Part shown: one piece after another, positions 1-23,772 of the stretch
Layout: each line of letters starts with the position of its first letter
Position numbering within the stretch: position 1 is the first letter of the stretch
From: Cyanophora paradoxa CCMP329
Lineage: Eukaryota > Plantae > Glaucophyta
Direction of reading: 5' to 3'
Length of the DNA stretch: 64,000 bases
Assembly (NCBI GenBank): GCA_004431415.1
Contig: QPMI01000514.1
Location: 248,001 to 312,000 of the forward strand
Notes under the pieces: generated by a model
What the model was told of the DNA's origin: nothing
The model's input: the letters and a program-made list of their open reading frames with translations, nothing else
Database searches by the model: none
Made by a program: the position numbers and the translations under genes

Positions 1-1597
1 CCCCGCATAGAGTGGACCGCCCGGCCCTAGAGAAGCTCGGGGGGTGAGGGGGGAGGGGACGTTAGGGCAGGGATGCCTCGCTGGGCGGCGCTGACAGAGG
101 GGTGGGGGGGCAGTACCACCGGGTGATCGAGAGCTACGCGCAGCTCATCTTCTGCGTCGTCGTCGAGCGCAAGCTCTGGGGTCCGCCCCGCCCCGCCCGA
201 TCGCGATGCATCCCTTGGCCGCCGGGCGAGGCATCGAGCGCCGAGCGCCGAGGGGCGGGGGCGGGGCGTGCAGGGCTCATCACGTGCCACTGCCGTCACC
301 CGCGCTTCGTGCCGGCGGCCTCGCGCAACGCCCTCACGCCCCTCGTGCAAGTCTTTGGCAAGTGCCTCGAGATGGTGCGAGCCGGTCCATCGCGCAAGCA
401 GCTGCTGATCGCCCCGCCCCTTTGCGGCTGCGCTGGGCCGGGCGGATCCGCATCGGAGCCCCTTCAGATCGGCTCCCTTGCGAGCGCTCGCAATTGAGAG
501 CGGCGCGCGCAGATCTACCTGGACCGCAAGCGCGAGGCTGAGATGCGCGTCAAGCGACTCTCGCTCGAGGTGCGCGCGGCGGCGCCGCAGTCGCCGTCCC
601 CGCACCTTCGGCCTTGGTCTGGTCGAACCGCGCCCTCGGGGCAGATGTTCTCGCGGCTGGCGAGCGACCCGGACGGCATCGCCGCCGACCTCTTCCTGCC
701 GCCCGCCGCCCGGCCCCACCCAGAGGTCACGCTTTCCCTCCCCGCCCCGGCCGGCCCCGGAGGCCTCGGCGGCCCCGCCGGCCCCGCCGGCCTCCCGCGC
801 CGGGGGAGCAGCAGCACCAGCAGCAAGATTGATAGGTGCGCGCCCTGCTGGCAAGATGGGCCGGCGCCACGCGACCCACCCGGGTGCGGCAGCATGGAGC
901 GGCACTCGAACACGCTGCTGGACATCGTCGACTGCTGCGGGGCGGCCGTCGTGCAGGCGCTCGCGCCGGCCTCGCCGCCTGGCGGCAGAGAGGGCTGACT
1001 CGGGGCCGGGGGCGCAGGGGGGCCTCATCACCGCGGCGGGGCTCGTCCCCTCCAACGCCGAGATCCTCGCCCTCGGTGCGAGAGCCGCCTCCCGCTTCCG
1101 CCCTGGCCCCGGGCGGGTCGGCCGGCGACGGTGCGCCGGGCGGACGCTCGCCCGTGACGCCGCCCTCGCGGGGGCGCGCAGTCGACGTGATGAAGAGCCT
1201 GCCGGCGGCGAGCCACGAGAGCAGCGAGGAGCAGACCGACATCCTCACCAGCCTCGCCCTGTCCGCCCCGCCCCGCCCTCGCCCTGGGCGCGCCCCGGGC
1301 CCGATGGCGGCGCGGGGGCGCGCAGGCGGTGCGTGTCGGAGGTGCCGAAGCGGACGGCGACGCTCTGGTTCGCTGAAAGCGCCGTCAGCGAGGTGCGCGG
1401 CGCCGAGCGGGGCCGAGGGGGCGGGGCGGTGGGCCTCGCGCCGCTGAGGGACGCCGCGCGGGGCGCCAGATGGCGACGTGCGCGGCGGGGATGGCCCTCG
1501 GGTGGTTCGGTGGCTTCGCCGCCGCCGCCGTCGAGCGCGGCCACGTCCTCTGGGTCCGCCCCGCCCCCCTCCCGCCCCTCCCCGCCCCTCCCCGCTC

Positions 1598-1629
<32 letters not shown>

Positions 1630-6985: not shown

Positions 6986-8817
6986 CCGCCCGCCCCGCCG
7001 CGCCAGTTTGATTTGTTTCCGACTTCCCTCCTCCTCAGCTAGACCTTGTAGATCGCTTGCACGTGCACGCACAGTACTAGTTTGTTCTGCTTTTTCATTT
7101 CGCGCGCGATCGATATCGACGTACGCGTCGCATGTTGTCACGTGAAGTCATAGTGCATCATCTCGAGCTCACTGGCTCATATGCATTATGGCAAGATCAT
7201 GTGAATTGATCATTTGGACTGTTTGATCGCTCTAGTTCCGAATCGGTATCGGTGATTCAGTTCAAACTCTCGCTGCCAGGCAGTCGATTGGCCTATATCT
7301 AGCTTTGGATATCGACGTCGACGTCGTTTAGCCAACTATAATTTTAGCTGTAGTCAGATTATTCTCTGCGCAAGCAGCAGCGGGTATCGCTAGTTGTATT
7401 TTTTTTGGCAATAGGGGCTTCCTTTCTTTGCGGCGCCATATGCATGTGACCAGCTCAGAATGTCTGGCTTAATTATAAGCTTGCGATACACTGACAGCTC
7501 TAGTTGCCGTTGATATAGCTATCGATTTCATGCCAAAAAGCCAAATAATCGATCGCTATACTGAGTAGCTAGTTTCAGTTTCTTTTTGCGATTGAAGATC
7601 AAGATTTTCCTTCATTTCTCTCTTTGCAGCTAGCGCTGTGCGGTGTTTGGCTTCTAGATCTCGAGGTCATGCTAGAATATTAGTGGCACTACATCTAGCT
7701 ATAGATCTGCAAGTTTTCTTGATTTGCAATGAATTAGCTCGCGATCGAAGTTTCGAGCATAGACAAGGAATTGACTCAGTGAAATTTGTCAGATATCGAT
7801 GCGACGGGTTCGGATTTTCAGCTATAGCAACCTTAAGCTTCGGGCACCAAATTGCAATTGCAATATTAATGCCAGATATTAATGTGCACGTGTATATACC
7901 CCAACTTCCCCAAGGCCTGCTTCCAACACATGCGCATGCGCATCCGTGCATTAATATTATTATAAACAAGCGTACGTACGACGTATATACGTGCAGAACA
8001 CGATCGCGAGCTCACGATCGATATCATATGCCCTCCCAAATGCACATAATTGACACTATAGCTAGCTATAGCTATATAATGCCCTTTCTGTCCTCATTGC
8101 CTACTTAATCTTAAATCGACGTTTTCTCCAGCGATAGCAGGGAAAACAATTATATTATTTGATCCATATGAAGCAACGATGTATCAGATAGATTCGAAAT
8201 TTGAATGTTGTTTATATCTGTATTAGTATTGCAGGTTTCACAGGAGTTTATGGCGAGCTGATTATGAATGTACGGCAATGAGGAGGATGAAGCCGAGGCT
8301 AATGACGTCGACAATTTGAAGTGCGACTTACCGACGTATACCGAAAGAATGCGTATAAACTGAACCGCCAGTCCTTGCTAGAGGCCTGCATATGTATATG
8401 ATATCAATTGTCAACTGAAAGGCATCAAGCCCATGCATATGATTGAAGACTAAGAAGCCCAGACTTTGCAGAAAACATGCATATGCGCACTAAGTGATCA
8501 TCAACGAAAGGATATTCACTGAAGCTTTCACTGAAGGATATTCATGAACGAAAACTAGTCAAGCTTTCACTGAAGGATATTCAAGTGAAAGAATTACTAC
8601 GTCATAGAAAAATAAGACTAGCACTGAGTTCGATGCTATATATAGCCACATGATCATGAACAAGACGAACAAACGCTAAAGGATAAATCACGCGATCGAT
8701 ATCGATATCGCCGCGCGCGACGTGGAAGAGATATATATATAGATATAGCAAGACTCTAACTTGGCAATAATAGATGTATATATGCTCTACGTATACCACC
8801 CTACAGCGCGAGCAGCT

Positions 8818-8968
8818 TTTTTTTTGCAAAAGTGGACGTCGCATTGATACACCACGGCACATGTATCAATGTTCTACGTGACGTGCCCTTCCGACCGGTC
8901 AACTATCTAGCCGAAGGTGCTAGCTAGGTGCCGGCCATGGGTCGCTCAATATGGGAGGTTCGCCTGAG
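8818..8968 (-). mobile_element. Short poly(A)-tailed retroposon (SINE or heavily 5'-truncated LINE)
   Basis: Poly-T at the left end; flanked by direct repeat CCTACAGCGCGAGCAGCT at 8800-8817 and 8969-8986 (TSD); 3' end resembles the element at 40053-41203. Confidence 0.8.
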
Positions 8969-9051
8969 CCTACAGCGCGAGCAGCTCGCGATCGCTGGAG
9001 CGCGCCCGCGATCGCTGGCCCTCGAGCCACGTCTAAGCGACGGGCGCCGGC

Positions 9052-9307
9052 TGTCGGATGGGAAGAAGCCCACCCGGTACGCCCTGCGCGGTCTAGCGCA
9101 GGCGGTGGTGATAGCAGGAAGCACAAGTGGTCTATTCACAAGTGTACCCGTACAGGGACGGCGTACCCCTCAGATGGGGCCGCGCCCGGCGCTAAGTCAC
9201 AACACAGAGAGCGCTACAAGCTAGAAGCTTACTAGCGCTAGACTAAGGCTAGAGGCTAACCATAGACTACCAGCTAACCTAGTCCGAGGGCATCGCGGCA
9301 TGCGACA
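9052..9307 (-). repeat. 3' LTR of the Gypsy element
   Basis: Direct repeat of 15964-16219 with TG...CA termini. Confidence 0.95.
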
Positions 9308-9940
9308 ACTCCTCACTCTGCATACGATGCGTCCGCGCATCGGACCGCGCCAAGCTCGTCTGCACGCGCAGCGGGTCTCCCAAATCGCGGCGGCGACGGA
9401 GCAGGAGCTCCACTCGAGGTAGATAGGTCATCATCAGCAACCAGCAGCACCAAGTCGACGAAGTCGGGGTAGATAATAAGGGTAGAGGTAGTAGGATCCG
9501 ATACCAGGTATGCATGTACCTAAGCAACCCTGGCAAAGCTCGAAAGTGCAGAAAAGCATAGTGGCTGAAACCCGTGACTGGCCCAAAACTCGCTCCGTAC
9601 GGCGAGCACCGCAGGAGAGGGGCACGGATGGGAAGTTTCACCGCCTCGGAAGAAAACACGAGGAGGTATCCGGGCCACCCATCAGGCCCAACGAAAGAGC
9701 AGGGCACGATAGAGTGGACCGCCGGCCGTACGCCTTTCTTGGGCCGCACGCGCGCAAGCAAAGCTCACACTCTACCACTCCTCTGAGCTCTGGGCCCATA
9801 CTCCAGAAAAGGGAACGAAAGTCTTCAAGGTGCAAACCGCCACCAACCCACACTTTGCCCGACAAGACAGCACAAGTGTGATCGGCCGACGTCCCTTGAG
9901 AGAGCCAAGGTTGAGGCAAAGCTGGCAAAGAAATCTGCCC

Positions 9941-11600
9941 TCACAATTCTTCCACCAAGATCACATCGGTGTCGCCCTCGGCCGCCCCAACGGGGCCCTC
10001 GGCGCCGACATCAGGGACAATATTTGTGTTTTGGTCAGGTTGCGTAGAGTCCGAAGAGGGGTCGATGGGGTCCACCGTATCCACGTCCGGCTTCCGTGGC
10101 CGACCCAAGCGTGGGCGAGCTTGAGACTCAGAGAGCCGTGGCCGGAAAGGAAGCATGCAGTCGATGTGAGCCACGGTCTCGCGCAGAGGGCGGACCCGGG
10201 TGTCACTCAAGGCCGAATAAGGTTTAGCCGATCCTTTCACCGTGTAGGTGTAACCGCCAGGGTTAACGCCGGTAACCGTGTAGGGACCGACCCACGAATT
10301 GTACAGGCCTTTATCATGGTCACCCATCCAGCACAAGACCTTGTCGCCCACCTGGAAGCGACGGCGATGCGGCGGGTTGCCTGTGCGAGCTACCATACGG
10401 CTCCGATAGAACCGGCGATACTCGCGCGAGGCAGCATCGGTGCTAGCCGCGGCCTTCGTCATAGCGAGGAGGTAGTCGGCTGGATGCGTGTGGTCGGGGT
10501 TCGAGAAGCGAACGCCCGCGCCGAAGCGCACTTCGCAGGGAAGGTGCACATCCACGCCACGGTGCAAGACCATGGGCGAGAAGCCGGTGGCGGAGTGCAC
10601 GGTCGTTCGCAGGGCCAGGACGATGTCCGCATTGTACATGGGCCAGTCAGAGAGAGGCCTCTTGTGCTCGCGGCACATCGCGTAGGCGAGTGTTTTGTAA
10701 ACGCCACCGAGGCGCTCGGCGCCACCGTTGGTAGCGTGGTGGTAGGCAGCAGCATGCACGAAGCGCGTGCCCTTCTCTTTGAAGAACTCGTTCCACAGGC
10801 CCCCACCAGCTGGGAACCGCGGTCCGTGAGGATGCGCGCAGGGACGCCTTCATGCATGTAGAAATCGATCGCGGTGGCCAGTAAAGCCTCGCCAGAGACG
10901 CGGGCTAGCGGATAGATATAGCAGAACTTGGTATACGCGTCGACGTACGCGATAATGTACCGCAGTCCGTCTTCATGCATATCCAAGTGGAAAATATCCA
11001 CCTGCCACAGGTCGCCTCGGCCCGAGGGCTGTATCACTTGGATAGCGGTACGGCGGGGCTTCACTGCCTTCGCAAACTGACAATGGGGGCAGGACCGCAC
11101 GAAGCGCGCGATCGAAGCGTACATGCCAGGCCACCAGAATCGCTGAGCAATACGACGCGCGATCACGTGGGCTCCGCGGTGGGCCCAGCCCTCGTGATAG
11201 GCGTACAGAACTCGGTCGATCCAAGCGTCAGGCAGTACGGGCAGGAACCGGCCGGCAGGCACTAGCGGGTTGCGCTCGATGACGCCGTCTTCAGCGAGGC
11301 TGAAGTCGTCGGCCAGCCTCACGAACCGCTCCTTGGCCGCAGGCAGTGCGCGCACGAGGAAGAGCAGGGGTCTGCCCCTCGTTTGAAGCCACGTGAGCAC
11401 CGAGTCGGATTTTCACCCTTCTCATAGTAGCCCATAAGCTTCTTACAGAGGGGGTCTTCCTTCTGTGCGGCGAGCAGGCGTTCCCGTCTCTCGAGCGGAA
11501 ACATGCGTCGCAGCGAGTCCGGGAGTGCGCCATCAATTGCAGGCGAAGGCCCGCAGGCCCAGGCGTCGAGGACAGTGTCCACAAAGACCGGCTTGCATGG
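9941..11600 (-). CDS. Gypsy integrase (HHCC zinc finger, rve core, GPY/F module), split by apparent frameshifts
   Basis: YHEGWAHRG...CPHCQ; WQVDIF; VDAYTKF; ILTDRGSQ; NGGAER; WVGPYTV, spread over ORFs 11319-12029, 10459-11400 and 9941-10759. Confidence 0.9.
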
Positions 11601-11892
11601 CGGGCGGACTTCCCGACCTCTGGGGTCGAGCTCGACCCACCGCCGCGGGGCCAGCGTCTCCACGGACACCACTTCGGAATCTGGAGCCTGAGGGCTCGGC
11701 CGTGAACGGCCTCCGCGGCGATGCAGCGGCTTCGGGGCGTCGGGCGCGGTAGGTTGCACCCGCATCTGATTCCGCGCCGTCTCGGGAGACAGCGAACGCC
11801 GACGGGACGGTCCCGGGGGCGGCTCCCTCTCGACGGGCTCCGGCTCCCAATCCAAGTGGATCGGCTCCGGCACCTCGCTCTGGTCGGCCGGG

Positions 11893-14106
11893 CTACGCCA
11901 ATGCCTCGTGTTGTGCTCGTCTCGCGGCTGGCGTCTCATGGCCGGGCCACGGGGAAGGATCCCAGAGGGGTGAGCAGGGCGAGGCTCGGCGAAGCCCTTG
12001 CGATCCACCGGCGCGGGCCCGTCCGGCACGCGTCGGCAGTTTCTCGAGCAAGGCTAGCGGAAACCCATCGGCGTCGCACGCGACGTCCGGGTCGGCCTCG
12101 GACGAGCCTTCCGACTCGGACTCGGCGGCGGCCGCCTCGGCGTGCGCGTTCTCTAGTAGCGAAGGGGGCACTCCGTCATCGCCGTCGGCAAGGGCGTCCG
12201 GCATGGGCGAATCGGAGTCCGAGCTAGCGTCGGGATCGCGGGAGCCGGCCGCCGGGCGGCGATCTCGCTTGGCAGGCGGTGGGGACGGAGACCCTGGCGC
12301 CTGGGGCGCGAAGCGCTCCGGGGCGGTTCTCGTCCTCTTTCTCGACTCGTCGTCGCTGGCGGCAGCAGACGCCTTGGCTCCTGCGTAGCCCGCGGAAGCG
12401 GCGAGCTTGGCAAGCTCGCGCGGCACCCGGCGGGTGCGGGCCGAGGCTGGAGCTGGCTCGGGGGGCCGCGACTCCTCCTCTGCATAAGGGGAGCGGCCCG
12501 CCGTCTCCTCGGGCGCGGCTGCCGGGCTCGGCCCGTCGGTGGGCGGGCGGCTTCGCCGCCGGCTCGAGCGGCCGAGGTTTGCAGGTGCCGCGCCTTGGAA
12601 GCCGGCGGAGTCGGCAAGCTTCCGCAGAGCCCGCTCAGTGGGGCCCAGTTGTACGCGGAAGATGCCGAGGGGGACGTCAGGATCCTCGGGCTCGGCGCCC
12701 ACAGCGCGCTGGGGGACGCCGAAGCCTTCGGCTCCCTCGTAGGCCGCTGGCGTCGAGGAAGAGCCATCGGCTCCGCCGGGCTGCCAGACGGGGTGGTCCT
12801 TTGGAAGGCGTGAGCACGCGTCAGGGCCGCCGTTCTGCTTGCCCGGGCGGTAGACGATCTCGAAGTCGTAGGCCTGCAAGAGCAGAGACCAACGGCCGAG
12901 CCGACCTGTTGTCGGGTCCAGGCTTTTCAGCCACTGGAGGGCGTGGTGGTCTGTTCGGACCAGGAACTGGGGCCCGCCCAGCAGATAGTGGCGCCAATAC
13001 TTGATGGCCCAAACTACTGCGAGGCATTCCAATTCCGTGGCGGAGTAGTTCATTTCAGCCGGCAACAACGTGCGGCTGATGAAGGCAAGGGGGCGCTCAA
13101 CGCCGTCCTTGTCCGTCTGACTCAGAATCGCGCCGATAGCGTATGTACTGGCGTCCGTCTGGAGTATGAAGGGCTTAGAGAAGTCCGGGAACCGCAATAT
13201 AATATCGCGGCCCAGCAGTTCTTTCAGCTCCTTAAAGGCGCGGTCGGCGGCACCGCCCTCGGGCCAACTCCAGACGGCGTCCTTCAATAGAAGGCGCTGC
13301 ATGGCGTACACCACCTTGGAGAAGTTCTCTACAAAGCGGCGGTAGTAACCGGCGAGGCCCAAGAACGAGCGGAGCTCGTCCGCATTCTTAGGCGTCTGCC
13401 AGTCCGAGATCACCTTGGTCTTCGCGGGGTCCTGCCGGATCCCTTCGGCGGAGATGCGGTGGCCTAGAAGGTCGATTTCTGGCACGCAAAAGCGGCACTT
13501 CGACGGCTTCAGGCGCAAGTTCGCCTTGGAGATCGTCTCGAAAAGCGCCTTTAAGTCCAAGAGGTGCTGATCGATTGACGGGGAGAACACCGTGATATCA
13601 TCGATATAGGCCACGACACAGGTCGTTAAGAGAGGGCCTAAGATCGCGGTGATCGCGCGGGAGAAGGCCGCGGGGCCATTGGTCACACCGAACGGGGTCA
13701 CGCGCCACTGGAAATGACCCCAGGGTACGACGAACGCAGTGTACGCGCGCGAGCCGGGGTGTAGAGGAAGCTGCCAGAAGCCAGCCGTGGCATCCGCTGT
13801 TGAGAAGACCATCGAGCCGCGCAGGCGCTCGAGCTGGTCGTCGATGCGGGGCAGCGGAAACACGTCGCGTTCAGTGATCTGATTCAGCCGCCTGTAATCT
13901 ACGCAGAAGCGCCAGGTGCCGTCCTTCTTTGGAGCGAGCACCACTGGCGATCCGTACGCAGCTTGCGAGGGCTCGATCAGACCCAGCTCGAGGAGCTTCT
14001 GAATTTCTTTGCGAGCATGCTCTTCAGCGTGTGGATTCATGCGCCGCGGAGGCGTGAACACAGGGAGCCGGCTCGTGAGCCGGATCACGTGCTCGTAATA
14101 GAGCAA
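11893..14106 (-). CDS. Gypsy pol: reverse transcriptase + RNase H, then a low-complexity linker
   Basis: KKDGTWRFCVDYRRLN, LPRIDD, PFGVTNGP, YIDD, QTDASTYAIGAIL, NYSATELECLA, RTDHHAL, DACSR. Confidence 0.95.
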   Translation of the reverse strand: MLYYEHVIRLTSRLPVFTPPRRMNPHAEEHARKEIQKLLELGLIEPSQAAYGSPVVLAPKKDGTWRFCVDYRRLNQITERDVFPLPRIDDQLERLRGSMVFSTADATAGFWQLPLHPGSRAYTAFVVPWGHFQWRVTPFGVTNGPAAFSRAITAILGPLLTTCVVAYIDDITVFSPSIDQHLLDLKALFETISKANLRLKPSKCRFCVPEIDLLGHRISAEGIRQDPAKTKVISDWQTPKNADELRSFLGLAGYYRRFVENFSKVVYAMQRLLLKDAVWSWPEGGAADRAFKELKELLGRDIILRFPDFSKPFILQTDASTYAIGAILSQTDKDGVERPLAFISRTLLPAEMNYSATELECLAVVWAIKYWRHYLLGGPQFLVRTDHHALQWLKSLDPTTGRLGRWSLLLQAYDFEIVYRPGKQNGGPDACSRLPKDHPVWQPGGADGSSSTPAAYEGAEGFGVPQRAVGAEPEDPDVPLGIFRVQLGPTERALRKLADSAGFQGAAPANLGRSSRRRSRPPTDGPSPAAAPEETAGRSPYAEEESRPPEPAPASARTRRVPRELAKLAASAGYAGAKASAAASDDESRKRTRTAPERFAPQAPGSPSPPPAKRDRRPAAGSRDPDASSDSDSPMPDALADGDDGVPPSLLENAHAEAAAAESESEGSSEADPDVACDADGFPLALLEKLPTRAGRARAGGSQGLRRASPCSPLWDPSPWPGHETPAARRAQHEALA

Positions 14107-15421
14107 GTTCGCGCAGGAATTCAGTGATCTTCTGGCGGTAGACCGGATCGTCCGGGCGCGGCGGCGGCGCAGAGGGGGACGGGAAGATCGCGCGGATCAC
14201 AACGTCGACCTCCTCGTCATCGCCCGCGAACGCGTACCGGCAGAACATCACTAGCTCTTCCGTCTGCGCGTCGTGCGCGGAGTCCTCGTCGTGCTCGTGC
14301 GTGCAGCATTCGCAGTGCGTGTGGGCCCGCATCGCGCGCGCGCTCGAGTCCTTGGACCCGCGGGCGCCCGACGGGACGATGGGGACGGCCGGCGGAGCGG
14401 CGGCTGCGACGGCGCGCTGCAGGGACTGGGCCACGCTCGGGGCGCGGGCCGGAACCGCGCTCGGCAGGGCGCTTCGCTTGACGACGTACGCGGAGCCCGG
14501 AACGTTCGAGATATCCGTGTCCCAGGCGCCGAGCTCACGGCAGCGCTGGCGCACGTAGTTGACGAGGCCGACCTCGTCCTTCAGCGTGCCCTCGCGCACG
14601 CGCTGAGCAAGCTCGGCCTGAATCACGGTCAGAATCTCGAGGTTCTTGAGCATGCGGCGCCGGTCGCGCTCTGACAGATCTTTCACGTCATCGAACTCGC
14701 GGAACTCGCCGCGGTTTCGGCGTGTGATCATGTCTTTGAGCTGGCGGACTAGCGCCGTAAGCGAGGTCTCCAGGGGCCGGCGTGCGTCCGGGTGCATGCA
14801 CAGGCGGCAGGTGCGGCGGACGCAAGCCTCCGGGTTCTCGCCTAGGTAGGGAAGGCGCAGGACCTCCTTGAGGTCGTCCGGGTTCCGGTCGCCGGAATCA
14901 GACTCCAGGCGCGCGCGGATCGCGGCGAAGGTGGTCTCGCGCTTAGACGCAGCGATGGCCTCTTCGATTTCCGCGATCTGCTCGCCGAGCCCCTCGAAAA
15001 GCAAACGCTCATGCTCGCTGGCGAAGCCCTCGCGTTCCTTTTCGTCCCTTTCGCTCCGCAGCTTCACGAGCTCGCTCTTACGCGCGCGTTGGCCGGCGTG
15101 AAAGAGTTCGATCTCGCTCCGCACGCTGTGCGCCGGATCTAAAGTTTGGATGAGCGCGAGGCCCGTGTTCTGCTGCTGGCTGTCGCCGGCGTCTTCAGCC
15201 AGATTCAGGATGTTCCGGCTAAGCGCGGCGGCAGCCTCGAAGGCAGCGAGATGGTCCTCGGCCATCTGGCGGTCGGCGCCTGGCTGTAGCAGCGGAATCC
15301 GGCGCAGCATCTCGAGCGCATTCGTCGGAATGCCGCTCAGCGTGCTCGGTTCTGCTGTGAAGGGTGCCAGGTTCGCCATTCGAATGTGATACTCCGCGGA
15401 AGCCCCGGTTCCGGAGGACAT
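14024..15421 (-). CDS. Gag-like ORF of the Gypsy element
   Basis: 465-aa ATG-initiated, helical-looking ORF between the 5' LTR and pol, overlapping pol in another frame. Called on position only. Confidence 0.7.
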   Translation of the reverse strand: MSSGTGASAEYHIRMANLAPFTAEPSTLSGIPTNALEMLRRIPLLQPGADRQMAEDHLAAFEAAAALSRNILNLAEDAGDSQQQNTGLALIQTLDPAHSVRSEIELFHAGQRARKSELVKLRSERDEKEREGFASEHERLLFEGLGEQIAEIEEAIAASKRETTFAAIRARLESDSGDRNPDDLKEVLRLPYLGENPEACVRRTCRLCMHPDARRPLETSLTALVRQLKDMITRRNRGEFREFDDVKDLSERDRRRMLKNLEILTVIQAELAQRVREGTLKDEVGLVNYVRQRCRELGAWDTDISNVPGSAYVVKRSALPSAVPARAPSVAQSLQRAVAAAAPPAVPIVPSGARGSKDSSARAMRAHTHCECCTHEHDEDSAHDAQTEELVMFCRYAFAGDDEEVDVVIRAIFPSPSAPPPRPDDPVYRQKITEFLRELALLRARDPAHEPAPCVHASAAHESTR

Positions 15422-15963
15422 TCTTTCACGAAAAGCTTGCGGCGTAAAGCCAAGCTTATCGATCGGAATGTGCGCGCTCGGGCGCCTTCGAGGTCCGCGG
15501 TCGCGCGACGAGGCTTCTCGAAGCCAAGTCGCTGAGGTCGTCCGAACTCCGTGGAACCCGCGGAGTCAGGCAAGCTACGCAGCGACCACTCAGGGTCCTG
15601 TTTCGCGAGCTCTGCTCTCTGGGCGGCGAGCTACGCGGCGACCGCGAGGGTCCCGTTTCGCAAGCCTTTTCGACTCCGGTCGTTTCGCTCGGTGCCTCTG
15701 GCAGCCGAGGTGAGCAAGCTCACGTCGCACGAAACCGGGACGCCCCCGGATCGTGTTTGCGCTCAGTTTGCGAGAGCAGCACGCCCCAGTTCGTCAACCT
15801 GCTCGCTCAGCCTTTGCGGGCACGGGCGGGGAGCGTCCGCACGCTCCTCGACCTCTTTCGAGGTTCTCCCGTGCGCCGGCTGAGCTGCGGGTGCTGGGTT
15901 GGGCTGGTTGCTGAGGACGGTCGCTGAAGATCGCTGGTTCGTGCTCCGTAGGCACGTGGCGCC

Positions 15964-16219
15964 TGTCGGATGGGAAGAAGCCCACCCGGTACGCCCTGCG
16001 CGGTCTAGCGCAGGCGGTGGTGATAGCAGGAAGCACAAGTGGTCTATTCACAAGTGTACCCGTACAGGGACGGCGTACCCCTCAGATGGGGCCGCGCCCG
16101 GCGCTAAGTCACAACACAGAGAGCGCTACAAGCTAGAAGCTTACTAGCGCTAGACTAAGGCTAGAGGCTAACCATAGACTACCAGCTAACCTAGTCCGAG
16201 GGCATCGCGGCATGCGACA
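15964..16219 (-). repeat. 5' LTR of the Gypsy element
   Basis: Direct repeat of 9052-9307. Confidence 0.95.
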
Positions 16220-19200
16220 CCGGCGCCGGCAACTTGGCGAGGGCGGCGGCGATGGCGGAGGCAAAGACGCGGGCGGCGACGATGTCCTCCTCGTTGAAAT
16301 TCTCGCACCGGTCCCCCACCGCCTCCTTCCACCTGCACACGCGCACGCGCACATCAAATCTAGCTATAGATCTCGACACGCTGCCCTTTTGACAGTTCGA
16401 TTGAGAACACGCACAAAGCGAATGAGTTCCGCGGACCGAGCTTGCCGTCGTCGGTCTCGACGTAGGCGGAGTTTCTGTCGCCCGCCCAGCTGACCTCCTG
16501 CGCAACAATAGTATACGTAAGTATTACAGCGAGACATGACCAATTACGGTCAACGTTGGCGTTTCAATTAAATTGCCGCGTTCAGATTAAGTTGCTTTGC
16601 AAATAGATAAGAGATCTAGATCTAGAGCACCTGCTGTAGAGGCCGCCGGAACCAGAACGCTACCACATCGTTGAAGACCGAGACGGCAATAAAGCCGCCC
16701 TTCCAGGCCAGCGCCCTGCCGCCGACGCCGACGCTCTGCAGGCGGAACCATGGCGACTCAGGAATCAGCTATAGCTGCGCGCGGGGCGTTGTGATCCGGC
16801 TCACGCGCGCCTGTGCGTTCTCCGTTGTCCACACTTGGTGGCCGTCGGAATCCGGATAGCGGCTGCGCGACACGATTCGCGCGCTCATTGCCAAAGTTCA
16901 TCGGTACTAGTTACAAATTTCCAAAACCTGCACCGTGCTTTAGACCTGCCACCACGGAGGACGTCCGCAAGCCATTCCAGCTCAGTCTCTTCGACGACCT
17001 GCCGACGTCGACGGCGGACGTGCATATGCATATCGAACGTCAGACCGAAAGAAACCAGGAATTCGAACGGCGAAGGAAAAAGACACTGCGCACATCTCCG
17101 GCAGAAATCGCGCGCTTCGACGAAGAATCGAAGACGACCGACCCACTTGCGAGACATAACACATCAGAGCCAGACTCGCAAGACTATTGCATCAAATTAA
17201 AAAATGCAAACCTGCACGCAGGAATCATCGCGAGGATCGTAGCGTGGAGCTTGCGGCCGTTGGAATCCTTGTTCGTCCGTGCTAGTGCCCACCGATCGAT
17301 GTCCAGTTTACCGCCCGCAGTTTCAGTTGGGGTTTGCGTTGTCGCATGTTCAGCTGTGATCGGCCGCGGGGTCGCGATGGTGATGAGCAGCTGCAGGCGA
17401 TGCATGCAAGTCAGCCGCGATTTCTGAACCGGTAAGGCCAATGTATATAAATCGCACCTCTGCCGGGGCGAGCATGGCACGCTCTTTTGCGCCGCGCGTC
17501 CGATCTTTGTACACGGACTCCAGGCAGCGAGAAAACAGCTGTGCATGTGCCAAAAGTTAGTGCCTTCGCCAGCGAAATAGTTCTCTTTCTAACAACCTAT
17601 AATTAGTCAGATATCCAGATCATGATCAGAGTTTCTCGGCGCGCATGCGCATGCGCACCTGAACGATGCCGACGAGAGAGGTCCGGGCCTTGTAAGGCAC
17701 GTACACCCCCGTCTGCGCCACGCGGCCGCGGAGGCCAGCGCGATCGACATCAGGGCCGGAAGCGGTTGCGGAGGCAGTGAGCTCGCAGCCGGGCGCACGC
17801 CGTGGTGCAGGGTCACAAGGCCCCATAATTTGTTGTTCACGACGACCTGCCGGAAAGCACCGTTAACATTAAATCTCGTGTGTTTAGAGACCCGATGATT
17901 CCGGGATCCATTGGAGGCCTGAAGCTTAAAATAGCTGCAGTAAAGATATAGATGGCGACATATGCATTTCCATTCGCGTCCATGCAATTGCAAGGTACAA
18001 TCATTCACCGAGTAGACAAGCTGTGACCGCGAGGAAATGTTGAGATGAAACTGCCTGCGCATGCATATGCGCATTGGCGTAAGAATACTAAGAAAATGAT
18101 AGAGCACACAGAGCTGGGCATATGCTGGGTCTTGGACCCCACGTGCACTTGCACGCACGGGCCTCTCCACCTGGCGCGCATGCGCACCTGCAGCACGGCG
18201 TCGGGGCGCGAGCGTTCGAGAAGTACATGTCCAGGGCGCGCTTGGTGTCCGGGTTCAGGTCGGGCAGCAGGCCGACGCCCGCTGATATCGATCGAGGGAG
18301 CGGTGCGTCAACGAAGATCGAATTGAAGACGCGACGACGAATGCCAATGCTGCAGGTGCGCACTGTCGTGGCTGTCGAGCATGAGGCGAGCCCTCGTAGA
18401 GTAGAAAATGGCCCGAGAGAAGATCGGGATGTCGCTGGCTGCAGTGCGGATGCGGGCGCGAATGAGGTTGTGATATCGATGGTTTCGATCCCATGCGAAG
18501 CGGCGATCACTGCTCATGACTGACCGGGAAAGCGGAGGCCGAAGAACGGCGGGAGATTCCGATCGCGAAGCGTCTCACCCATAACTTGGCCGTGCCCCTC
18601 TCTGCGGGAGAGCGTACAAATCAAAATAAGATAACGGGAAGCCTTCATGATCAGGGCTTATTATAAAGTTGCGAATAAAACCTCCGCACTTGGAGAAAGC
18701 GTAACAGCTGCACGCAGAACTTGCATGAGTGCTAATTATAATAGGGACAGACGAAAGGGGCGAGAGAGGCACCAGACGCGGTCGAAGCGGGAGATACTCG
18801 AAAGCACTTCGGTGATAACCTGGCAGAGCTTCGTCTCCTCATACTCGCCTTGAACACGCTCTGCCGAATTCGAACAGACCCAGTCTGAGTGTCAGCACGA
18901 ACGCACACGAACGTTAACGGAGCGACAATGCGTCGAACGGCACCTTTGCCCTTCTGGATCTCGGCCGAGGGGTACGACGCAACTGCCGTGAACCCGGTGG
19001 GGAGGCGCGCATCGGAGGCAATGGCGTCTTTCTCCACAAACGGCTCCAGTTCGAGGACGGCTGCGAACGAGAGGCGATCAAGGTTCACGATCGCCAATTG
19101 CAATCCGAACGCGCGTGTTATCACGATCGCGAGCGATATGTAACTGTCGCCTGGCCTTCGGCCCTCGCACTCGAGCTCGATCTCAAACTCACCGCAACCG

Positions 19201-20244
19201 CTGCGTGACGCGGAGTTCGAAGCTCAAGGGATCAGCAGCAATCCTCGGAGCGCGGAGCACGGGCACGCGCCCTAGCCGCATGCGCACCCGTCGTCGTTCT
19301 CGGCGCCCGGGGGCCGGTGGAGGATGCCGTACCAGCGGGAGCCGTCGTGGGCGCTCACGGTGAGGGGCATCGCCGCCTGGAGCTCCTCGTTGGAGCGCGT
19401 TCCGCGCAGGGCCGAGCGGATGACCTGCACCGACTCCTCCGACACCAGCCCGTCCAGCGTGTCCCCTTGCACGGCCTCGGGTCGCACGCCCAGCAGCGCC
19501 TGTCGGCGAGCGCGGGGAGCGGGGTGAACGAGCCGACAAAGCTGAAGCTTAAGCCGGGACGGGATGGACCCGGGAGAGGCCGCGGGCACCTCGGTGTTGC
19601 GCGAGATCTGCTGCACGACGAGGTCGAGCTCGCGCAGCACAGCCAGGACGCAAAAAGACTGCACGAATCTGCGGCGTGTCAGCTGCGGGCCCCGTGGAGT
19701 CGAGGATCCGGATGAAATACAAATATTGTAAACAGAGCAAGAGTTCGAAAGCGCTAAAGCTCATGCAGACAGGTCACCGGGTACCGATGATGCTATGAAA
19801 GGTTTATCTCTAAATGATATCAATCGGGAAAGGCGCCGCTTTACACAAGAGCAGGCAGGCGCCTGGGGAAAGGCGGCGCTACGCACTGTCCTCTCATCAT
19901 CTCGGCCTCCTGCGCGATGCCGTGACCGTGCACGTGGTGCGCACGTGCGCGTGGATCCCCGAGCATCAGAGCAAATTTTGGTTTTTGAAGCCGGGAGTAT
20001 CACGTGCACGCACGAAGTGCTCGATGTAGGCCGCAGATCGTTTCGGGGGTGCCCGTGGCCCTGTGGGTGACTCCCCAAGAGAGGCGGCGGCTGCGGGCGC
20101 CAGCTTGCGGTCTGCGAGAGCAACCGAGACGAAACCATCGCCGGCGCCAGATTTGGCATTGACGCTGCTGCCTGGGGAGCCCCCTAGGCCTGTCGCTACG
20201 CCTCCTGCAGGCGCTGGCTGCAGCTGGCTAGGACCGCAACCCAT
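16191..20244 (-). CDS. Sensor-only phytochrome PhyX2 (N-terminal extension-PAS-GAF-PHY), multi-exon, Cys-Cys bilin site, no output domain
   Basis: Spliced protein: MGCGPSQ...AAYIEHF|EAEMMRGQ|FVQSFCVLAVLRELDLVVQQISRNTE|ALLGVRPE...LELEP...SRFDRVC|CYAFSK|EGHGQVMGE...PPFFGLRFP|ASDIPIFSR...|...LDMYFSNARAPTPCCR|QFHLNISSRSQLVYS|VVVNNKLWGLVTLHHG|TGVYVPYKAR...FWFRRPLQQ|EVSWAG...LGPRNSFAL|WKEAVGDRCENFNEEDIVAAR...AKLPAP. Colinear with a Cph1-type photosensory core. The current stop lies in the LTR (16191-16193); the pre-insertion stop is at 9033-9035. Confidence 0.92.
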
Positions 20245-20946
20245 GAAGATGAAGCAGATAACGTGCACGGGCCGGCCGCGCCAGGGCGTTCCGAGAATCC
20301 GAGTTCACACGCGCGCGTAGCGGCGCAGCTGCAGGCCAGGCCTAGGCGGCCGCGGTCGCAATTAAACCTCAATGCACCTAAAGCTACTTCTTAAGATTCG
20401 CTGATCGATGCGGCGCTGTGGCAACTGCTTGATTCTGCAGCTGTCGCCGACTCGCCGTGGCACATGAACAGCATACGTAGTGTGAATCTGTGTGATACTG
20501 CCAGGCTGTGCCGCTGGTACCGTCCCCTAGTACCGTAGTACGTACGTACGTTTCAAAGTTTACAGTAACGTACTTTGAGCAGGCCCGGGAATCGCGCGCG
20601 CTGCGCTGCGCGTGCCTGCACATGTGCGCATGCGCGGCCTGCGCCGGCGCCGCGCCGCTGCCGCTGCTGGCCCTTCCGAAGTTCATGAGTCATGAATCAT
20701 GATCACGTGCACGGTGCGGCCCCCACCGTGCGGCACGGGCCGCACGTGCACCGTGGTCCGTGGCCCGCACGGTGCGGGCCGTGCGCATCATCAGCGCATG
20801 CGGCCCGTGCGCAGGGTTCGCCGCCCATAAATTACCGCGGCACCAAATTACCGCGTTTTAACAAACTTTTGGCGCGCCACAAATTACTGCTTTCCAAAAC
20901 TTCTGCGCCGGTAGGCGCTTTACTGCGCTACCAAATTACTGCGTTC

Positions 20947-23772
20947 CGTCGGCCTCGAAAACATACTATTTGGCGCCTTGTCTCCGTCCCGTCTTCCTAA
21001 TCTTGTCGTCCTTCAGTGTTTCCCGATGCTTTGGATCGATGCTCTTTACCGTTTGCATTTCAAATTGTATCGTTTGGGCGAGCAACAGTCGCCCCGCCGT
21101 CGTTTCTGTCGGGTTTGTAATGACGGATCTGCTCGCTCTCACGCGCACGTTTTCTCTGAGTGCCCGCTTTCTCGTTCGTTCTGGGATTTCATTCGTGAGC
21201 GCCTGAATTTCTGGGCTTCTACTCTTCCACCGGATGAGCGTGAAGAGGTCGCAGTGCCTGACCTCTCTCTCTTCCACATCCTCTCGGTTCCGGATTTATC
21301 TGGACCCATTTTGCGCAGTAAAGTTAACCCCGCCTTCTGCCTTCGCTCACTTGGAGCGATCCTTGCTGGCGTATTTTCCATCCAACAGGTTGCTCGCGCT
21401 CGGTGCGATCTTGAGGAGGCTGACATTGATGCACCTTCTTACAACCGCGCCGCGCTTGTTGCCGCCTGGGACAGAAATATGTCGTACCTCGAGTTCACCC
21501 TTCCGCAGGCTTCGGCCTTGTTGGAGGAGCGGCGCGCTCGCTTGGCTGCTGCTGACGCTGATGATCAGGCTGCCTCGGATGATGACGCACATGATTCAGA
21601 GTCTGGTACCGGTTCTCATCGTTCTAGTTCAAGCTCTGATTCTGACTCGTCCGGCGCTCCTTCTTCGGGCGGTGCTGACAACCTCGTCTCTTCGCGTGAC
21701 ATCGATTCTGTCCTCCGGAATCCTGCGGAGTTTGCCGTTCGTGGGAATGTCCCGTTGGGGATCCCTGGTGGTCGCCCGCCTCCTGCGCCGTCCCCTCCTG
21801 CTCTGGCCCTGTAGTGACCCTTGGGCCCATTCCTATTCCTGCTCTCGCTGCCCCTCTCGACGCTCCTTTCCCCCATTCCCTGCGGTCCCGATCCCTGTGC
21901 TCCTTGGCCCTCTGGCCCCGCCTCTGCCTCCTCCCTCCTTACAACTTGCTGTCACGGGCCTCTTCACTTGCCTGTTCCCCGGCAGGTCCCTGGTCATCTT
22001 GCAGCTCCATACCCCTTCTTACCTCTTCCCCTTGCTCCTCCACTTCCGCCCTGCGAGGCCCTCTTTCTGACGTCCTCCTGGTTCAGCCCCTCTTCAGCCC
22101 ATCCTTCTTGCCCCGCTTCTGCAACTGTGACGCTGGGCGGCACTATCTTTTTGCATGCCCTACCGCCTCTACGTCCCCGGTCTCTTTGCATCTGCATCCA
22201 CTTTCCCGGATCCGCTTGCAGGCCCCTCGCCTCCAGAGCTCGCCATCACTTCGGCCTCCCTCGCCTCCGCTCTCGATTCTCCATACCCTTCGAATAGCCG
22301 CCTTCTCTCTCCTCCTCCGCCCTCCCTCCCCCCTCGAGCTCCGGGTCCTCGGCCTCTGCCCGCTTCCGAGTGTTGGCGAGACTGTCCTCTTTTCGGTCTC
22401 CCCGTCATTCCGGCTCCCTGCTCCCCTTCGGCGCCTCGGGTCCCATATGCGGGTCCTATCCCGCTTCCTGGCGCTCGTGAGATTCGCCGCCGGCGCCCTC
22501 GTCGGGCCCTTGCGCCCTCGAGCTCGTCTCTCTCTGCGCCGCCCATGGCCATGACCTCCGTGTCATCTGATCCGGCGCCACCCGACCTTTCTCCAGCTTC
22601 GCTGCCCTCTCTTCGGCGCCGGCAGCGATCCCCGTCACCTGCTCGCGGCCCTTCCCCTGCCTCCGACCCTTCCTCGGCCCCTCCTCGCCTAGGCCTCTTC
22701 CGTCTCGTCGGCCCCCGCCGCATTCCCGTCGGCGGATCTCTCGATCGACCCTGGACTCTCCGCCTGCCACTGTCTGCGGGGTACCTCCGCCGCCGTGTTC
22801 GGCGCCGGCTGTCAGTACTTTGCTCGGTAGCTCCCCGTCGTGGCTCCTCGGGGCCTCTTCGTCGTCGTCGTTCGCTGGGTTCCGGCTCCGGGTCAGATTT
22901 CTCGCCGGGCTTACCTTCTCCTGGCTCTGCTCCTGGGCCCTCAGCTCCGGGACCGGCTTCCCCGATCTCCTCCCGGACTCGTGGTCGTACCCGTCGCCGG
23001 CTTGCCGAGCCTGCGGCTCCTTCTACTTCCCCCGGCGGTTTGCCGGGCCGGACCCTCCGGCCTTTGTTCTTGATACCGGACTGCCGCCTTTGCCTTCGTC
23101 TTCTGCTTCGCTGGTCGCGATCGTATCCCGCCGGCGCCGGCGTACTTCTTCGTCTTCTAGTTTAGTTCGGTCTGGTTCGGATTCTGATCGTAGTGTTGAT
23201 GCTAGAGTTAGTTTCAATACTAGCTATAGTCCTCGTGCTCGACCTGTTGTTCGCCGTCGTTTGCAGTTCGATTGCCCGCCTCGACCCTGGCCGGCTTTAG
23301 TGATTCCTTTGACTGTCCTTTTGCCTGCTCTTGATCCGCCTGCTCCGCCTCCTGTGTCCTCCTCGACCTCGTGCCGTAGCTCTGCCCTTTCGCATCGTCC
23401 TGCTTCGCCTCCGCCTCCATGTCGTCTTGTTGTTCCTCTTACTTGTCTTCTTCCTGTTATTTATCTTTCTCAATTTTGTCCCCGCTTCTTAGTGATGTAA
23501 TTCCTTCTGATATTGATGGTATCTCTAGCTCTGGCTCTTCTTCGTGTCAGTTATCCTCTGTCCCTAGATCTGCTCGATTTATCGTCTCTTCTCGCTATCG
23601 ATCTGTCTCGAGCTCTGTGTCTTTCCTTTTTTATTGTCGATTTTGGCTCTTTGTCTTATCTTTCTTCGTGCTCTTGTCTTAGTTATTTTGCTTTTTTGTC
23701 TTTATGCCCCCTGGGCAGCCCCCGCAGTGCTGGTGTCTAGAGACTGTGGCCGGTAATTCACCAAAAAAAAAA
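20947..23772 (+). mobile_element. L1/Tx1-like LINE, 5'-truncated copy A
   Basis: From 20972 a near-identical reverse complement of 23830-26631; ends GGTAATTCACC+poly(A); flanked by 26-bp direct repeat TACTGCGCTACCAAATTACTGCGTTC (20921-20946, 23776-23801); about 25 extra nt at the 5' junction. Confidence 0.92.

What the first reader, a model, noticed from the sequence alone, without database searches (positions are those of the whole stretch)
16191..20244. Output-less phytochrome starting with MGCGPS: predicted myristoylated/palmitoylated membrane-anchored photoreceptor
Seen: the ATG at 20244 gives MGCGPSQLQ, then a Gly/Ala/Ser-rich linker and an intact PAS-GAF-PHY core. The frame stops about 20 residues after PHY both with the LTR (16191) and in the reconstructed pre-insertion allele (9033), so the missing output predates the transposon. 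I saw no kinase exons in 7000-9030. Established: M-G-C-x-x-S is a typical dual N-acylation signal, and characterised eukaryotic phytochromes are mostly soluble with C-terminal kinase-like modules. Inference: a lipid-anchored light sensor signalling by protein-protein interaction.
Basis: partly seen in the sequence, partly recalled or inferred. Interest (0 to 1): 0.85.

Follow-up and report, generated by a model that had tools for sequence, protein, structure and literature searches.

The report
Sensor-only algal phytochrome, start unproven
This is an intact 22-exon gene of the alga Cyanophora paradoxa for a phytochrome light sensor that naturally lacks any output domain, as do two sister genes, but the proposed lipid-anchor start (MGCGPS) and expression of the gene remain unproven.

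Summary
On the minus strand, 20244 to 16191, lies a 22-exon gene with GT-AG introns only and no stop or frameshift. It encodes 77 low-complexity residues starting MGCGPS, then PAS-GAF-PHY (644 aa; 639 aa before the transposon).

A Ty3/gypsy LTR element (9052-16219, identical 256-bp LTRs, duplicated target CCGGC) replaced only the last four codons.

The missing output is ancestral. Two paralogues elsewhere in the Cyanophora paradoxa genome (P0002, P0004; 57% and 62% identical) end at the same helix after PHY. There is also no room for kinase exons: a convergent plus-strand phytochrome-kinase gene fills about 1-7000.

The bilin site reads Cys-Cys instead of Cys-His.

The lipid anchor is not shown:
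- MGCGPS fits the N-myristoylation pattern and is the only ATG in its exon frame.
- That exon has only weak coding signal and no significant homology to the paralogue N-terminus.
- A rival start (ATG 19966, MLGD...) exists.
- The public gene model uses neither start.
- Three RNA-labelled runs showed no transcript.

The scan noted similar output-less, possibly lipid-anchored Cyanophora phytochromes before on other DNA (s1-534766, s1-570382).

Verdict: a real sensor-only, tandem-Cys phytochrome, a new variant of a known kind. Membrane anchoring is a plausible hypothesis, at about one in three.

The parts
20014..20244 (-). Candidate exon 1: ATG 20244-20242, MGCGPS... then 77 low-complexity residues ending ...KRSAAYIEHF; donor GTGCGT, phase 0
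   Evidence: Coding score +0.14 bit/codon in this frame against -0.14 and -0.09 in the other two. No Pfam family. No RNA support.
19910..20013 (-). Proposed intron 1 (104 nt, GTGCGT...GCGCAG). It holds the stop of the unspliced MGC frame and the rival start ATG 19966-19964 (MLGDPRARAHHVHGHGIAQ), which overlap as TGATG
19887..19909 (-). Exon 2, 23 nt: EAEMMRG(Q), matching EAEMMTAQ of P0004 and MREQ of P0002
19590..19668 (-). Exon 3: (Q)FVQSFCVLAVLRELDLVVQQISRNTE, start of PAS
19288..19499 (-). Exon 4: rest of PAS (ALLGVRPEAV...HRPPGAENDD)
   Evidence: Pfam PAS_2, E 6e-7 and E 0.002 on the exon alone
19193..19200 (-). Exon 5, 8-nt micro-exon (gGC)
   Evidence: It restores GGCAVLELEP as in P0004. 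The public model P0001 retains the intron here.
18944..19060 (-). Exon 6: AVLELEPF... (PAS-GAF junction)
18773..18860 (-). Exon 7: ERVQGEYEETKLCQVITEVLSSISRFDRV (GAF)
18690..18707 (-). Exon 8, 18-nt micro-exon (cCYAFS)
18525..18601 (-). Exon 9: KEGHGQVMGETLRDRNLPPFFGLRFP
18364..18438 (-). Exon 10: ASDIPIFSRAIFYSTRARLMLDSHD; the conserved D-I-P motif is at 18425-18433
18188..18281 (-). Exon 11: ...SNARAPTPCC; the bilin-site Cys-Cys codons are at 18190-18195
   Evidence: The first Cys aligns with the Cys of the Cys-His pair in solved FiDCB, and the second with that His (via P0004).
18009..18054 (-). Exon 12: RQFHLNISSRSQLVYS
17799..17846 (-). Exon 13: VVVNNKLWGLVTLHHG
17659..17712 (-). Exon 14: TGVYVPYKARTSLVGIVQ (end of GAF)
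17458..17538 (-). Exon 15: LFSRCLESVYKDRTRGAKERAMLAPAE (helix linking GAF to PHY)
   Evidence: The 3' boundary was set by hand at GAG|GTGCGA.
17212..17390 (-). Exon 16: LLITIATPRPIT...ILAMIPAC (variable part of PHY)
   Evidence: This is the least certain exon boundary; the region is poorly conserved.
17094..17145 (-). Exon 17: SGSVVFDSSSKRAISAGD
16934..16998 (-). Exon 18: VVEETELEWLADVLRGGRSKA
16805..16862 (-). Exon 19: RRYPDSDGHQVWTTENAQAR
16631..16735 (-). Exon 20: ...ALAWKGGFIAVSVFNDVVAFWFRRPLQQ
16415..16497 (-). Exon 21: EVSWAGDRNSAYVETDDGKLGPRNSFA (PHY tongue; PRNSF at 16420-16434)
   Evidence: Pfam PHY, E 2e-4 on this exon alone
16191..16332 (-). Exon 22: LWKEAVGDRCENFNEEDIVAARVFASAIAAALAKLPAP is host sequence down to 16220. 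The tail VSHAAMPSD and the stop 16191-16193 are read from the LTR.
16220..16224 (.). Target-site duplication CCGGC, right copy
9047..9051 (.). Target-site duplication CCGGC, left copy
9052..16219 (-). Ty3/gypsy-type LTR retrotransposon in the same orientation as the gene. LTRs lie at 15964-16219 (5') and 9052-9307 (3'). RT and RNase H lie in 11896-14106, integrase in 10459-11397. A purine-rich tract lies next to the 3' LTR.
   Evidence: LTR depth is about 6 times that of the gene in the 2012 DNA run.
9033..9035 (-). TAG that ended the frame before the insertion (...AKLPAPAPVA*)

Best explanation
The locus is an intact gene of Cyanophora paradoxa for a sensor-only phytochrome: a PAS-GAF-PHY bilin photosensory core that ends about 20 residues after the PHY domain, with no kinase or other output.

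- This architecture is inherited, not made by the transposon. It is shared with two paralogues at other loci, and this copy has changed least of the three.
- A very recent Ty3/gypsy insertion, with identical LTRs, swapped only the last four residues and the 3' untranslated region.
- The bilin site keeps the GAF cysteine. The neighbouring conserved histidine is a second cysteine (Cys-Cys). By inference, this could form a second link to the bilin and shift absorption to the blue or violet, as in dual-cysteine photoreceptors.
- With no enzymatic output, any signal must pass through binding to another protein. This too is inference.
- The N-terminus is unresolved. My favoured model (about 55%) starts at MGCGPS and splices a 77-residue disordered leader onto the core. 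In that case N-myristoylation of Gly2 and palmitoylation of Cys3 are plausible but untested.
For: - Gene model: 22 exons, all GT-AG, donors mostly GTGCG, introns 65-218 nt, no stop or frameshift.
- Identity: 61.6% to P0004 and 57.4% to P0002 over more than 520 columns.
- Organism and paralogues: the listing of cluster members gives Cyanophora paradoxa EukProt models tig00020943_g16304 (this locus), tig00000178_g12773 and tig00021133_g18910.
- Domains: Pfam PAS_2, GAF and PHY score above their cutoffs in both paralogues. PAS_2 and PHY also hit single exons of this locus.
- Closest solved structures: the cyanobacterial phytochromes FiDCB and Cph1, E about 1e-37.
- Shared C-terminus: all three proteins stop within 20 residues after the last PHY helix.
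- Constraint: this copy has the shortest branch, with 34 singleton changes against 64 and 95.
- No kinase on the minus strand downstream, while kinase boxes lie on the plus strand at 4462-4580 and 4808-4873.
- LTR element and target duplication.
- The 2012 DNA contig is identical over 16190-20857.
- MGC start: it is the only ATG in the frame, the donor and acceptor are consensus and in phase, and this is the best-scoring of the three frames.
- A second GAF cysteine giving blue-violet photocycles in tandem-cysteine cyanobacterial phytochromes: PMC7332365 and PMC8707292.
Against: - No transcript evidence. Seventeen RNA-labelled runs of the species hold next to none of the sampled words, and three of them laid on the locus gave no contig over the gene.
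- The gene sits among transposons and now has an LTR as its 3' end.
- The public model differs at both ends.
- Exon 1 lacks the GC3-rich codon profile of the other exons (GC3 0.62 against 0.80), has no Pfam hit, and shows no significant similarity to the N-terminus of P0004.
- The conserved histidine next to the bilin cysteine is missing, and several pocket residues differ (NMG is NIS here), so bilin binding and photoconversion are assumed, not shown.
- The paralogue ends come from automatic gene models that I could not check on DNA.
Confidence: 0.75

Rival explanations
1. One reading: translation starts at MGCGPS, Gly2 is myristoylated and Cys3 palmitoylated, and the sensor-only phytochrome works at a membrane through partner proteins.
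For: - GCGPSQ fits the PROSITE N-myristoylation pattern G-{EDRKHPFYW}-x(2)-[STAGCN]-{P}. Cys3 is the usual palmitoylation partner, as in Lck, G-alpha-i and plant CBL1 (established knowledge, not tested here).
- MGC is the only in-frame ATG of an exon that splices in phase through consensus sites.
- The MGC frame scores best of the three frames.
- Leads only: earlier scan notes report other short Cyanophora phytochromes with MGC-type starts (s1-534766, s1-570382).
Against: - No RNA evidence.
- MGC is absent from the public N-termini of P0004 (MSMQ...) and P0002 (MREQ...).
- Exon 1 is low-complexity, with a weak coding signal.
- Open frames of 75-140 codons occur in all three frames of this GC-rich stretch.
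- No acylation predictor or assay was available.
Confidence: 0.33
2. The protein starts at ATG 19966 (MLGDPRARAHHVHGHGIAQ-EAEMM...) or at a Met of exon 2 and is a soluble sensor-only phytochrome. The MGC frame is then an untranslated leader, an upstream ORF or untranscribed DNA.
For: - This start leaves 28 residues before the VQSFC motif, close to the 26 in the P0004 model.
- It needs no extra intron.
- Those 19 codons have GC3 of about 0.79, counted by hand from the sequence, like the other exons.
- Its alignment to the P0004 N-terminus scores higher than model A's (12 against 2), though neither is significant.
- The stop of the MGC frame overlaps this ATG (TGATG).
Against: - If the 20244 ATG is in the mRNA, a scanning ribosome meets it first.
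- The consensus donor and acceptor around 20013-19910 would be coincidental.
- The coding score of the 19 codons is only +0.07, and another frame of the same stretch scores higher.
Confidence: 0.33
3. The copy is silent or newly disabled. The reading frame is still intact, but the gene is not expressed, for example because the LTR insertion replaced its 3' end or because it lies in transposon-rich chromatin.
For: - No RNA contigs in three runs, and about zero sampled words in 17 RNA-labelled runs.
- The LTR element sits at the stop codon.
- Repeat DNA lies within 600 bp upstream, where depth jumps at about 20770.
- The automatic gene model is poor, as expected without RNA hints.
Against: - All 22 exons and 42 splice sites are intact.
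- It has the shortest branch of the three paralogues.
- The insertion is very young (identical LTRs) and changes only four residues.
- Assembled contigs drop rare transcripts, and photoreceptor mRNAs are often rare.
Confidence: 0.2
4. An output module exists but was missed: exons beyond the LTR element, or elsewhere.
For: None found. The only donor-like site before the pre-insertion stop is a weak GTCGCT.
Against: - No Pfam hit in any open segment of 6612-8865 on the minus strand.
- The spliced search with a histidine-kinase query found only low-complexity noise on the minus strand of 1-9046, while it found kinase boxes on the plus strand.
- Both paralogue models end at the same place.
Confidence: 0.03

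Closest known systems
Cph1-type cyanobacterial phytochromes (solved: Cph1 2VEA/3ZQ5, FiDCB 9JRY)
   Same: PAS-GAF-PHY order; bilin cysteine in GAF; D-I-P motif; PHY tongue motifs WxG and PRxSF. They are the best solved-structure matches to the paralogue P0004, E about 1e-37.
   Different: Cph1 carries a histidine-kinase output and a Cys-His bilin site. This protein stops after PHY and has Cys-Cys. Identity is only about 25-35%.
CparGPS1 and other glaucophyte phytochrome sensors
   Same: Same organism. CparGPS1 has an unusual blue/far-red photocycle without a red-absorbing dark state (PMC12420706, PMC12558739). This suggests that non-canonical bilin chemistry is common in this alga's phytochromes.
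   Different: The Cyanophora phytochrome catalogued in PMC6324907 is a histidine kinase. I could not obtain the CparGPS1 sequence, so the relation to this subfamily is untested. No significant similarity was found between this gene's exons and the other phytochrome genes in the window.
Tandem-cysteine cyanobacterial phytochromes (TCCP)
   Same: PAS-GAF-PHY proteins with a second GAF cysteine that attacks bilin C10 and gives violet or blue dark states (PMC8707292, PMC7332365). This locus and P0002 have two adjacent cysteines at the bilin site.
   Different: I could not check whether the second cysteine sits at the same position as in TCCPs, because the primary paper is not held. Phylogenetic relation is untested. 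Paralogue P0004 has Cys-Val.
Bacterial PAS-GAF-PHY-only proteins (e.g. Pontibacter, P0006, P0007, P0011)
   Same: Natural phytochromes of 516-535 aa that end at the same helix after PHY with no output domain.
   Different: Bacterial; they carry the N-terminal biliverdin-type cysteine and Val-His at the GAF site. Identity to this protein is 22-28%.
Dually acylated signalling proteins (Src-family kinases such as Lck, G-alpha-i, plant CBL1)
   Same: The N-terminal M-G-C-x-x-S/T motif (own knowledge).
   Different: Unrelated folds. Here neither the start codon nor the acylation is demonstrated.
Earlier scan findings s1-534766 and s1-570382 (other DNA of the same genome)
   Same: Output-less Cyanophora phytochromes read as possibly lipid-anchored.
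   Different: s1-534766 is described as PAS-GAF only. I could not read either locus, so their relation to this gene and its paralogues is unknown.

Membership tests
Phytochrome photosensory core (PAS-GAF-PHY) | PAS_2 domain at the N-terminus of the core | tested here: met
   Pfam PAS_2, E 6e-7 on the PAS segment and 1.3e-10 on the public model of this locus
Phytochrome photosensory core (PAS-GAF-PHY) | GAF domain with the D-I-P motif and a bilin-binding cysteine | tested here: met
   ASDIP and RAPTPCC are present. Pfam GAF scores above its cutoff in P0004 and P0002 and just below it (20.9 against 22.4 bits) in the flawed public model of this locus.
Phytochrome photosensory core (PAS-GAF-PHY) | Conserved histidine directly after the bilin cysteine | tested here: not met
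   It is Cys here and in P0002, and Val in P0004. The bacterial homologues and FiDCB have His.
Phytochrome photosensory core (PAS-GAF-PHY) | PHY domain with tongue motifs (WxG, PRxSF) | tested here: met
   WAGD and PRNSF are in exon 21. Pfam PHY gives E 2e-4 on that exon alone and 47-68 bits in the paralogues.
Phytochrome photosensory core (PAS-GAF-PHY) | Covalent bilin binding and reversible photoconversion | not testable with these tools
   Needs recombinant protein and spectroscopy.
Canonical eukaryotic or Cph1-type phytochrome (sensor plus kinase-type output) | C-terminal histidine kinase or kinase-related module | tested here: not met
   The frame stops 4 codons (pre-insertion) or 9 codons (with the LTR) after ...AKLPAP. 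No kinase exons lie downstream on this strand. The paralogues end alike.
Dual-cysteine (tandem-Cys) phytochromes | Second cysteine in GAF placed to reach bilin C10 | tested here: inconclusive
   Two adjacent cysteines are present, the second at the conserved His position. Equivalence to the TCCP position and reactivity could not be checked.
N-myristoylated and palmitoylated proteins | Gly2 within the N-myristoyltransferase pattern, plus Cys3 | tested here: met
   GCGPSQ fits PROSITE PS00008, and Cys is at position 3 (sequence; pattern from own knowledge).
N-myristoylated and palmitoylated proteins | The motif lies at the true translation start of an expressed protein | tested here: inconclusive
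   It is the only ATG in the frame and the splice is in phase. There is no RNA, the coding signal is weak, a rival start exists at 19966, and there is no N-terminal homology.
Ty3/gypsy LTR retrotransposon | Identical TG...CA LTRs, a 5-bp target duplication, and pol order RT - RNase H - integrase | tested here: met
   The primer-binding site was not examined.

The most novel reading that the evidence does not exclude
Cyanophora holds a small family of sensor-only phytochromes with a Cys-Cys (blue-shifted, dual-linkage) bilin site. At least this member is tethered to a membrane by N-terminal myristate and palmitate through a 60-residue flexible leader. It signals by light-dependent binding to partner proteins, perhaps the full-length phytochrome kinases encoded beside it.
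Probability: 0.22. Interest if true: 0.7.

Novelty: new variant of a known kind. Interest (0 to 1): 0.47.

Why it matters
Phytochromes of eukaryotes are described as sensor plus kinase-type output. In two length-limited protein searches (candidates of about 290-1000 aa) I found this sensor-only form in no other eukaryote, and full-text searches found no paper describing such a eukaryotic phytochrome.

A conserved three-gene family of sensor-only phytochromes in a glaucophyte would show that the photosensory core can be kept on its own for a long time. That implies signalling by protein binding alone.

The Cys-Cys, Cys-Cys and Cys-Val variation at the bilin site among the three paralogues is a natural series for colour tuning.

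If the MGC start is real, it would be, as far as my searches show, among the first phytochromes predicted to be lipid-anchored.

The corrected 22-exon model, including 8-, 18- and 23-nt exons, also shows that the public gene model of this locus is wrong at both ends.

Tried and rejected
- Pfam on raw stop-free segments gave almost nothing, because the exons are short.
- tblastn of all open segments against the rest of the window found no paralogue at E 1e-3. The only trace is a 21-residue GAF match at 33808-33870.
- The look-up of encoding contigs has neither paralogue on record. Their DNA, true N-termini, C-terminal exons and dN/dS could therefore not be examined.
- My first impression that ...IEHF|EAEMM matches P0004 ...SEHA|EAEMM did not survive a shuffle test. 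Neither start model is significantly similar to the P0004 N-terminus.
- An apparent PRRAPGCE match after LHH in another frame was rejected. The paralogues show an intron there instead.
- RNA evidence: none found. This is not proof of silence.
- A 33-nt match of RNA contigs at 20637-20669 belongs to other GC-rich transcripts.
- Rockwell 2014, Rockwell and Lagarias 2017 and Song 2020 are not held.
- Full-text searches found no paper on lipid-anchored or output-less eukaryotic phytochromes.
- No other eukaryotic homologue of 290-1000 aa was found. Longer proteins are outside that search by design.
- Left out on purpose: the joined 644-aa model was used only inside my scripts for alignment. It was not sent to Pfam, structure prediction, fold search or any database. 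Those steps were done exon by exon or with the stored paralogues.
- No complex prediction was run, because no specific partner is claimed.


Full report
**What is there.** The window is GC-rich eukaryotic DNA. A protein search with the PAS exon returned a 99%-identical public model (P0001, 371 aa) and a 57%-identical paralogue (P0002, 530 aa). Both are EukProt models of Cyanophora paradoxa: tig00020943_g16304 and tig00000178_g12773. A search with P0002 added a third member, P0004 (tig00021133_g18910, 570 aa).

**Gene model.** I wrote a spliced protein-to-DNA aligner and aligned P0002 and P0004 to the minus strand. One boundary was set by hand. The result:
- 22 exons from 20244 to 16191.
- 21 GT-AG introns of 65-218 nt.
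- Donors mostly GTGCG, acceptors mostly (C/G)CAG.
- Micro-exons of 23, 8 and 18 nt.
- No stop or frameshift.

The product is 644 aa, 61.6% identical to P0004 and 57.4% to P0002. By domain, identity to P0004 is 74% in PAS, 66% in GAF and 54% in PHY.

The public model P0001 is wrong at both ends. It starts with an 11-nt exon at 20474, skips exons 1-2, retains two introns, and reads through the donor after ...GIVQ.

**Family membership.**
- Pfam finds PAS_2 on the PAS exon and PHY on exon 21 alone.
- Pfam finds PAS_2, GAF and PHY above their cutoffs in both paralogues.
- The nearest solved structures are the cyanobacterial phytochromes FiDCB and Cph1.
- The D-I-P motif, the GAF cysteine, LWGL...HH, and the tongue motifs WAGD and PRNSF are all present.
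- The histidine that normally follows the bilin cysteine is a second cysteine here and in P0002, and valine in P0004.

A second GAF cysteine gives blue-violet dark states in tandem-cysteine cyanobacterial phytochromes. Cyanophora is cited as showing similarly widened colour sensing (PMC7332365, PMC8707292). CparGPS1 has a blue/far-red cycle (PMC12420706). Whether this protein behaves in the same way is inference.

**The missing output.** The last exon reads ...NEEDIVAARVFASAIAAALAKLPAP.

The transposon:
- A retrotransposon sits at exactly this point. Its LTRs (256 bp, TG...CA) lie at 9052-9307 and 15964-16219 and are 100% identical. The flanking target duplication is CCGGC.
- Its reverse transcriptase, RNase H and integrase lie in that order on the minus strand, so it is Ty3/gypsy-type. 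A purine-rich tract lies next to the 3' LTR.
- With the element, the frame ends VSHAAMPSD, with the stop at 16191-16193. Without it, the frame ends APVA, with TAG at 9033-9035. The insertion therefore changed four residues and the 3' untranslated region, not the architecture.

Evidence that no output was ever there:
- P0002 and P0004 end at the same helix (...FASSIGTALAAASARPAP and ...FASAIASAIAKKQ).
- Downstream on the minus strand nothing resembles a kinase.
- The plus strand of about 1-7000 carries a convergent phytochrome-kinase gene, with an N-box at 4462-4580 and a G1-like box at 4808-4873.

Bacterial PAS-GAF-PHY-only proteins exist too (Pontibacter), so the architecture is not unheard of. 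I found no eukaryotic counterpart outside Cyanophora in two length-limited searches, and no paper on one.

**Is it a live gene?**
- For: all exons and splice sites are intact, and this copy has the shortest branch of the three paralogues, with 34 singleton changes against 64 and 95. The insertion is very young.
- Against: 17 RNA-labelled runs of the species hold almost none of the locus's sampled words. Three of them gave no contig on the gene. These are assembled contigs, which lose rare transcripts.
- A 2012 DNA run has an identical contig over 16190-20857. It reaches 30 nt into the LTR, just short of the tool's 31-letter bridging rule, so the insertion was probably already present in that sample.

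**The N-terminus.** ATG 20244 opens MGCGPSQLQ... It is the only ATG in that frame, and a TGA lies 20 codons upstream.

Model A (MGC start):
- The frame reaches a consensus donor (CAC TTC|GTGCGT, last exon base 20014).
- That donor is in phase with a consensus acceptor (tcgcgcag|GAG) at 19909.
- The join adds 77 residues (60% Gly, Ala, Ser and Pro) to exon 2 (EAEMMRGQ), which is clearly homologous to both paralogues.
- A codon-usage score trained on exons 2-22 gives +0.14 bit per codon for the MGC frame. The other two frames score -0.14 and -0.09, real exons 0.32 +/- 0.23 and introns -0.44 +/- 0.25. This is modest support.

Against model A:
- Exon 1 lacks the GC3 excess of the other exons.
- Open frames are common in this stretch.
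- Its similarity to the P0004 N-terminus is not significant.

Model B (rival start): ATG 19966, inside the proposed intron 1, gives MLGDPRARAHHVHGHGIAQ-EAEMM... This leaves 28 residues before the VQSFC motif against 26 in P0004, and needs no extra intron. The public paralogue models start MSMQ... and MREQ..., not MGC, but I could not check their DNA.

I put the MGC start at about 55%. The sequence GCGPSQ fits the PROSITE N-myristoylation pattern, with Cys3 for palmitoylation (own knowledge). Acylation itself is untested, so the full membrane-anchor reading stands at about one in three.

**Earlier notes of this scan** (leads only; I could not read those loci):
- s1-534766 reports an expressed MGCxxSK PAS-GAF-only phytochrome, and s1-570382 an output-less, possibly lipid-anchored phytochrome, both on other DNA of the same genome. 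The idea has therefore been raised before in this genome.
- s1-603041, s1-576328 and s1-603190 describe the neighbouring phytochrome genes in this window. I confirmed the plus-strand kinase gene only in part.

**Limits.**
- The joined protein model was used only inside scripts. It was not sent to any search or fold tool; searches were made exon by exon or with the stored paralogues.

Noticed in passing
window 1-7000, + strand: A convergent phytochrome-histidine-kinase gene runs in from before the window. The GAF end (…VVVERKLWG, then LITCHCRHPRFVP) lies in 66-494. A kinase N-box (LLNGLTNAVKYSERG) lies at 4462-4580 and a G1-like box (GRGIAAESIPKLFRIFSR) at 4808-4873. A receiver-like stretch (PIVALTANV...AAGQDDC) lies in 6553-7008. 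Pfam on the raw segments found nothing, because the exons are short.
   Followed up: partly
window 19964-19970, - strand: The stop (TGA) of the unspliced MGC reading frame overlaps the next-frame ATG by one base (TGATG). If intron 1 were retained, the 92-codon MGC frame would be an upstream ORF ending exactly on the alternative start.
   Followed up: partly
window 19929-20007, - strand: Three CACGTG palindromes (G-box/E-box core) lie within about 80 bp around the alternative start. Two of them fall in the His/Val codons of the MLGD...HHVHGH reading. Probably chance, but earlier notes report a phytochrome-bHLH fusion in this genome.
   Followed up: no
window 19193-19200, 18690-18707, 19887-19909: Micro-exons of 8, 18 and 23 nt have perfect splice sites, and their residues are conserved in both paralogues. 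The public model P0001 misses the 8-nt and 23-nt exons.
   Followed up: yes
window 20770-21814: Repeat DNA begins about 550 bp upstream of ATG 20244. Depth in the 2012 DNA run jumps from about 6 to about 218 at 20769-20900. A 278-codon + strand ORF (20978-21814) has a Cys/His pattern that, by eye, resembles the zinc-binding tail of non-LTR reverse transcriptases. Pfam found no family.
   Followed up: partly
window 9052-16219: LTR depth in the 2012 DNA run is about 38-43 against 6.4 for the gene, so the LTR family has several copies. A contig leaves the LTR at 16219 into sequence identical to that after the other LTR (9308 onward).
   Followed up: partly
window 33808-33870, + strand: This is the only trace of similarity between this gene and the third phytochrome gene of the window (32944-39388): a 21-residue GAF match (QVVAERLRHASWPPYLGLALP). 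The clustered genes are very divergent, so this is not a recent tandem duplication.
   Followed up: no
P0006, P0007, P0011 (Pontibacter and relatives): The best-scoring hits outside Cyanophora for P0002 include natural bacterial PAS-GAF-PHY-only proteins that end at the same helix. For P0004 the best hits are Cph1-type kinases, some from cyanobacteria.
   Followed up: partly
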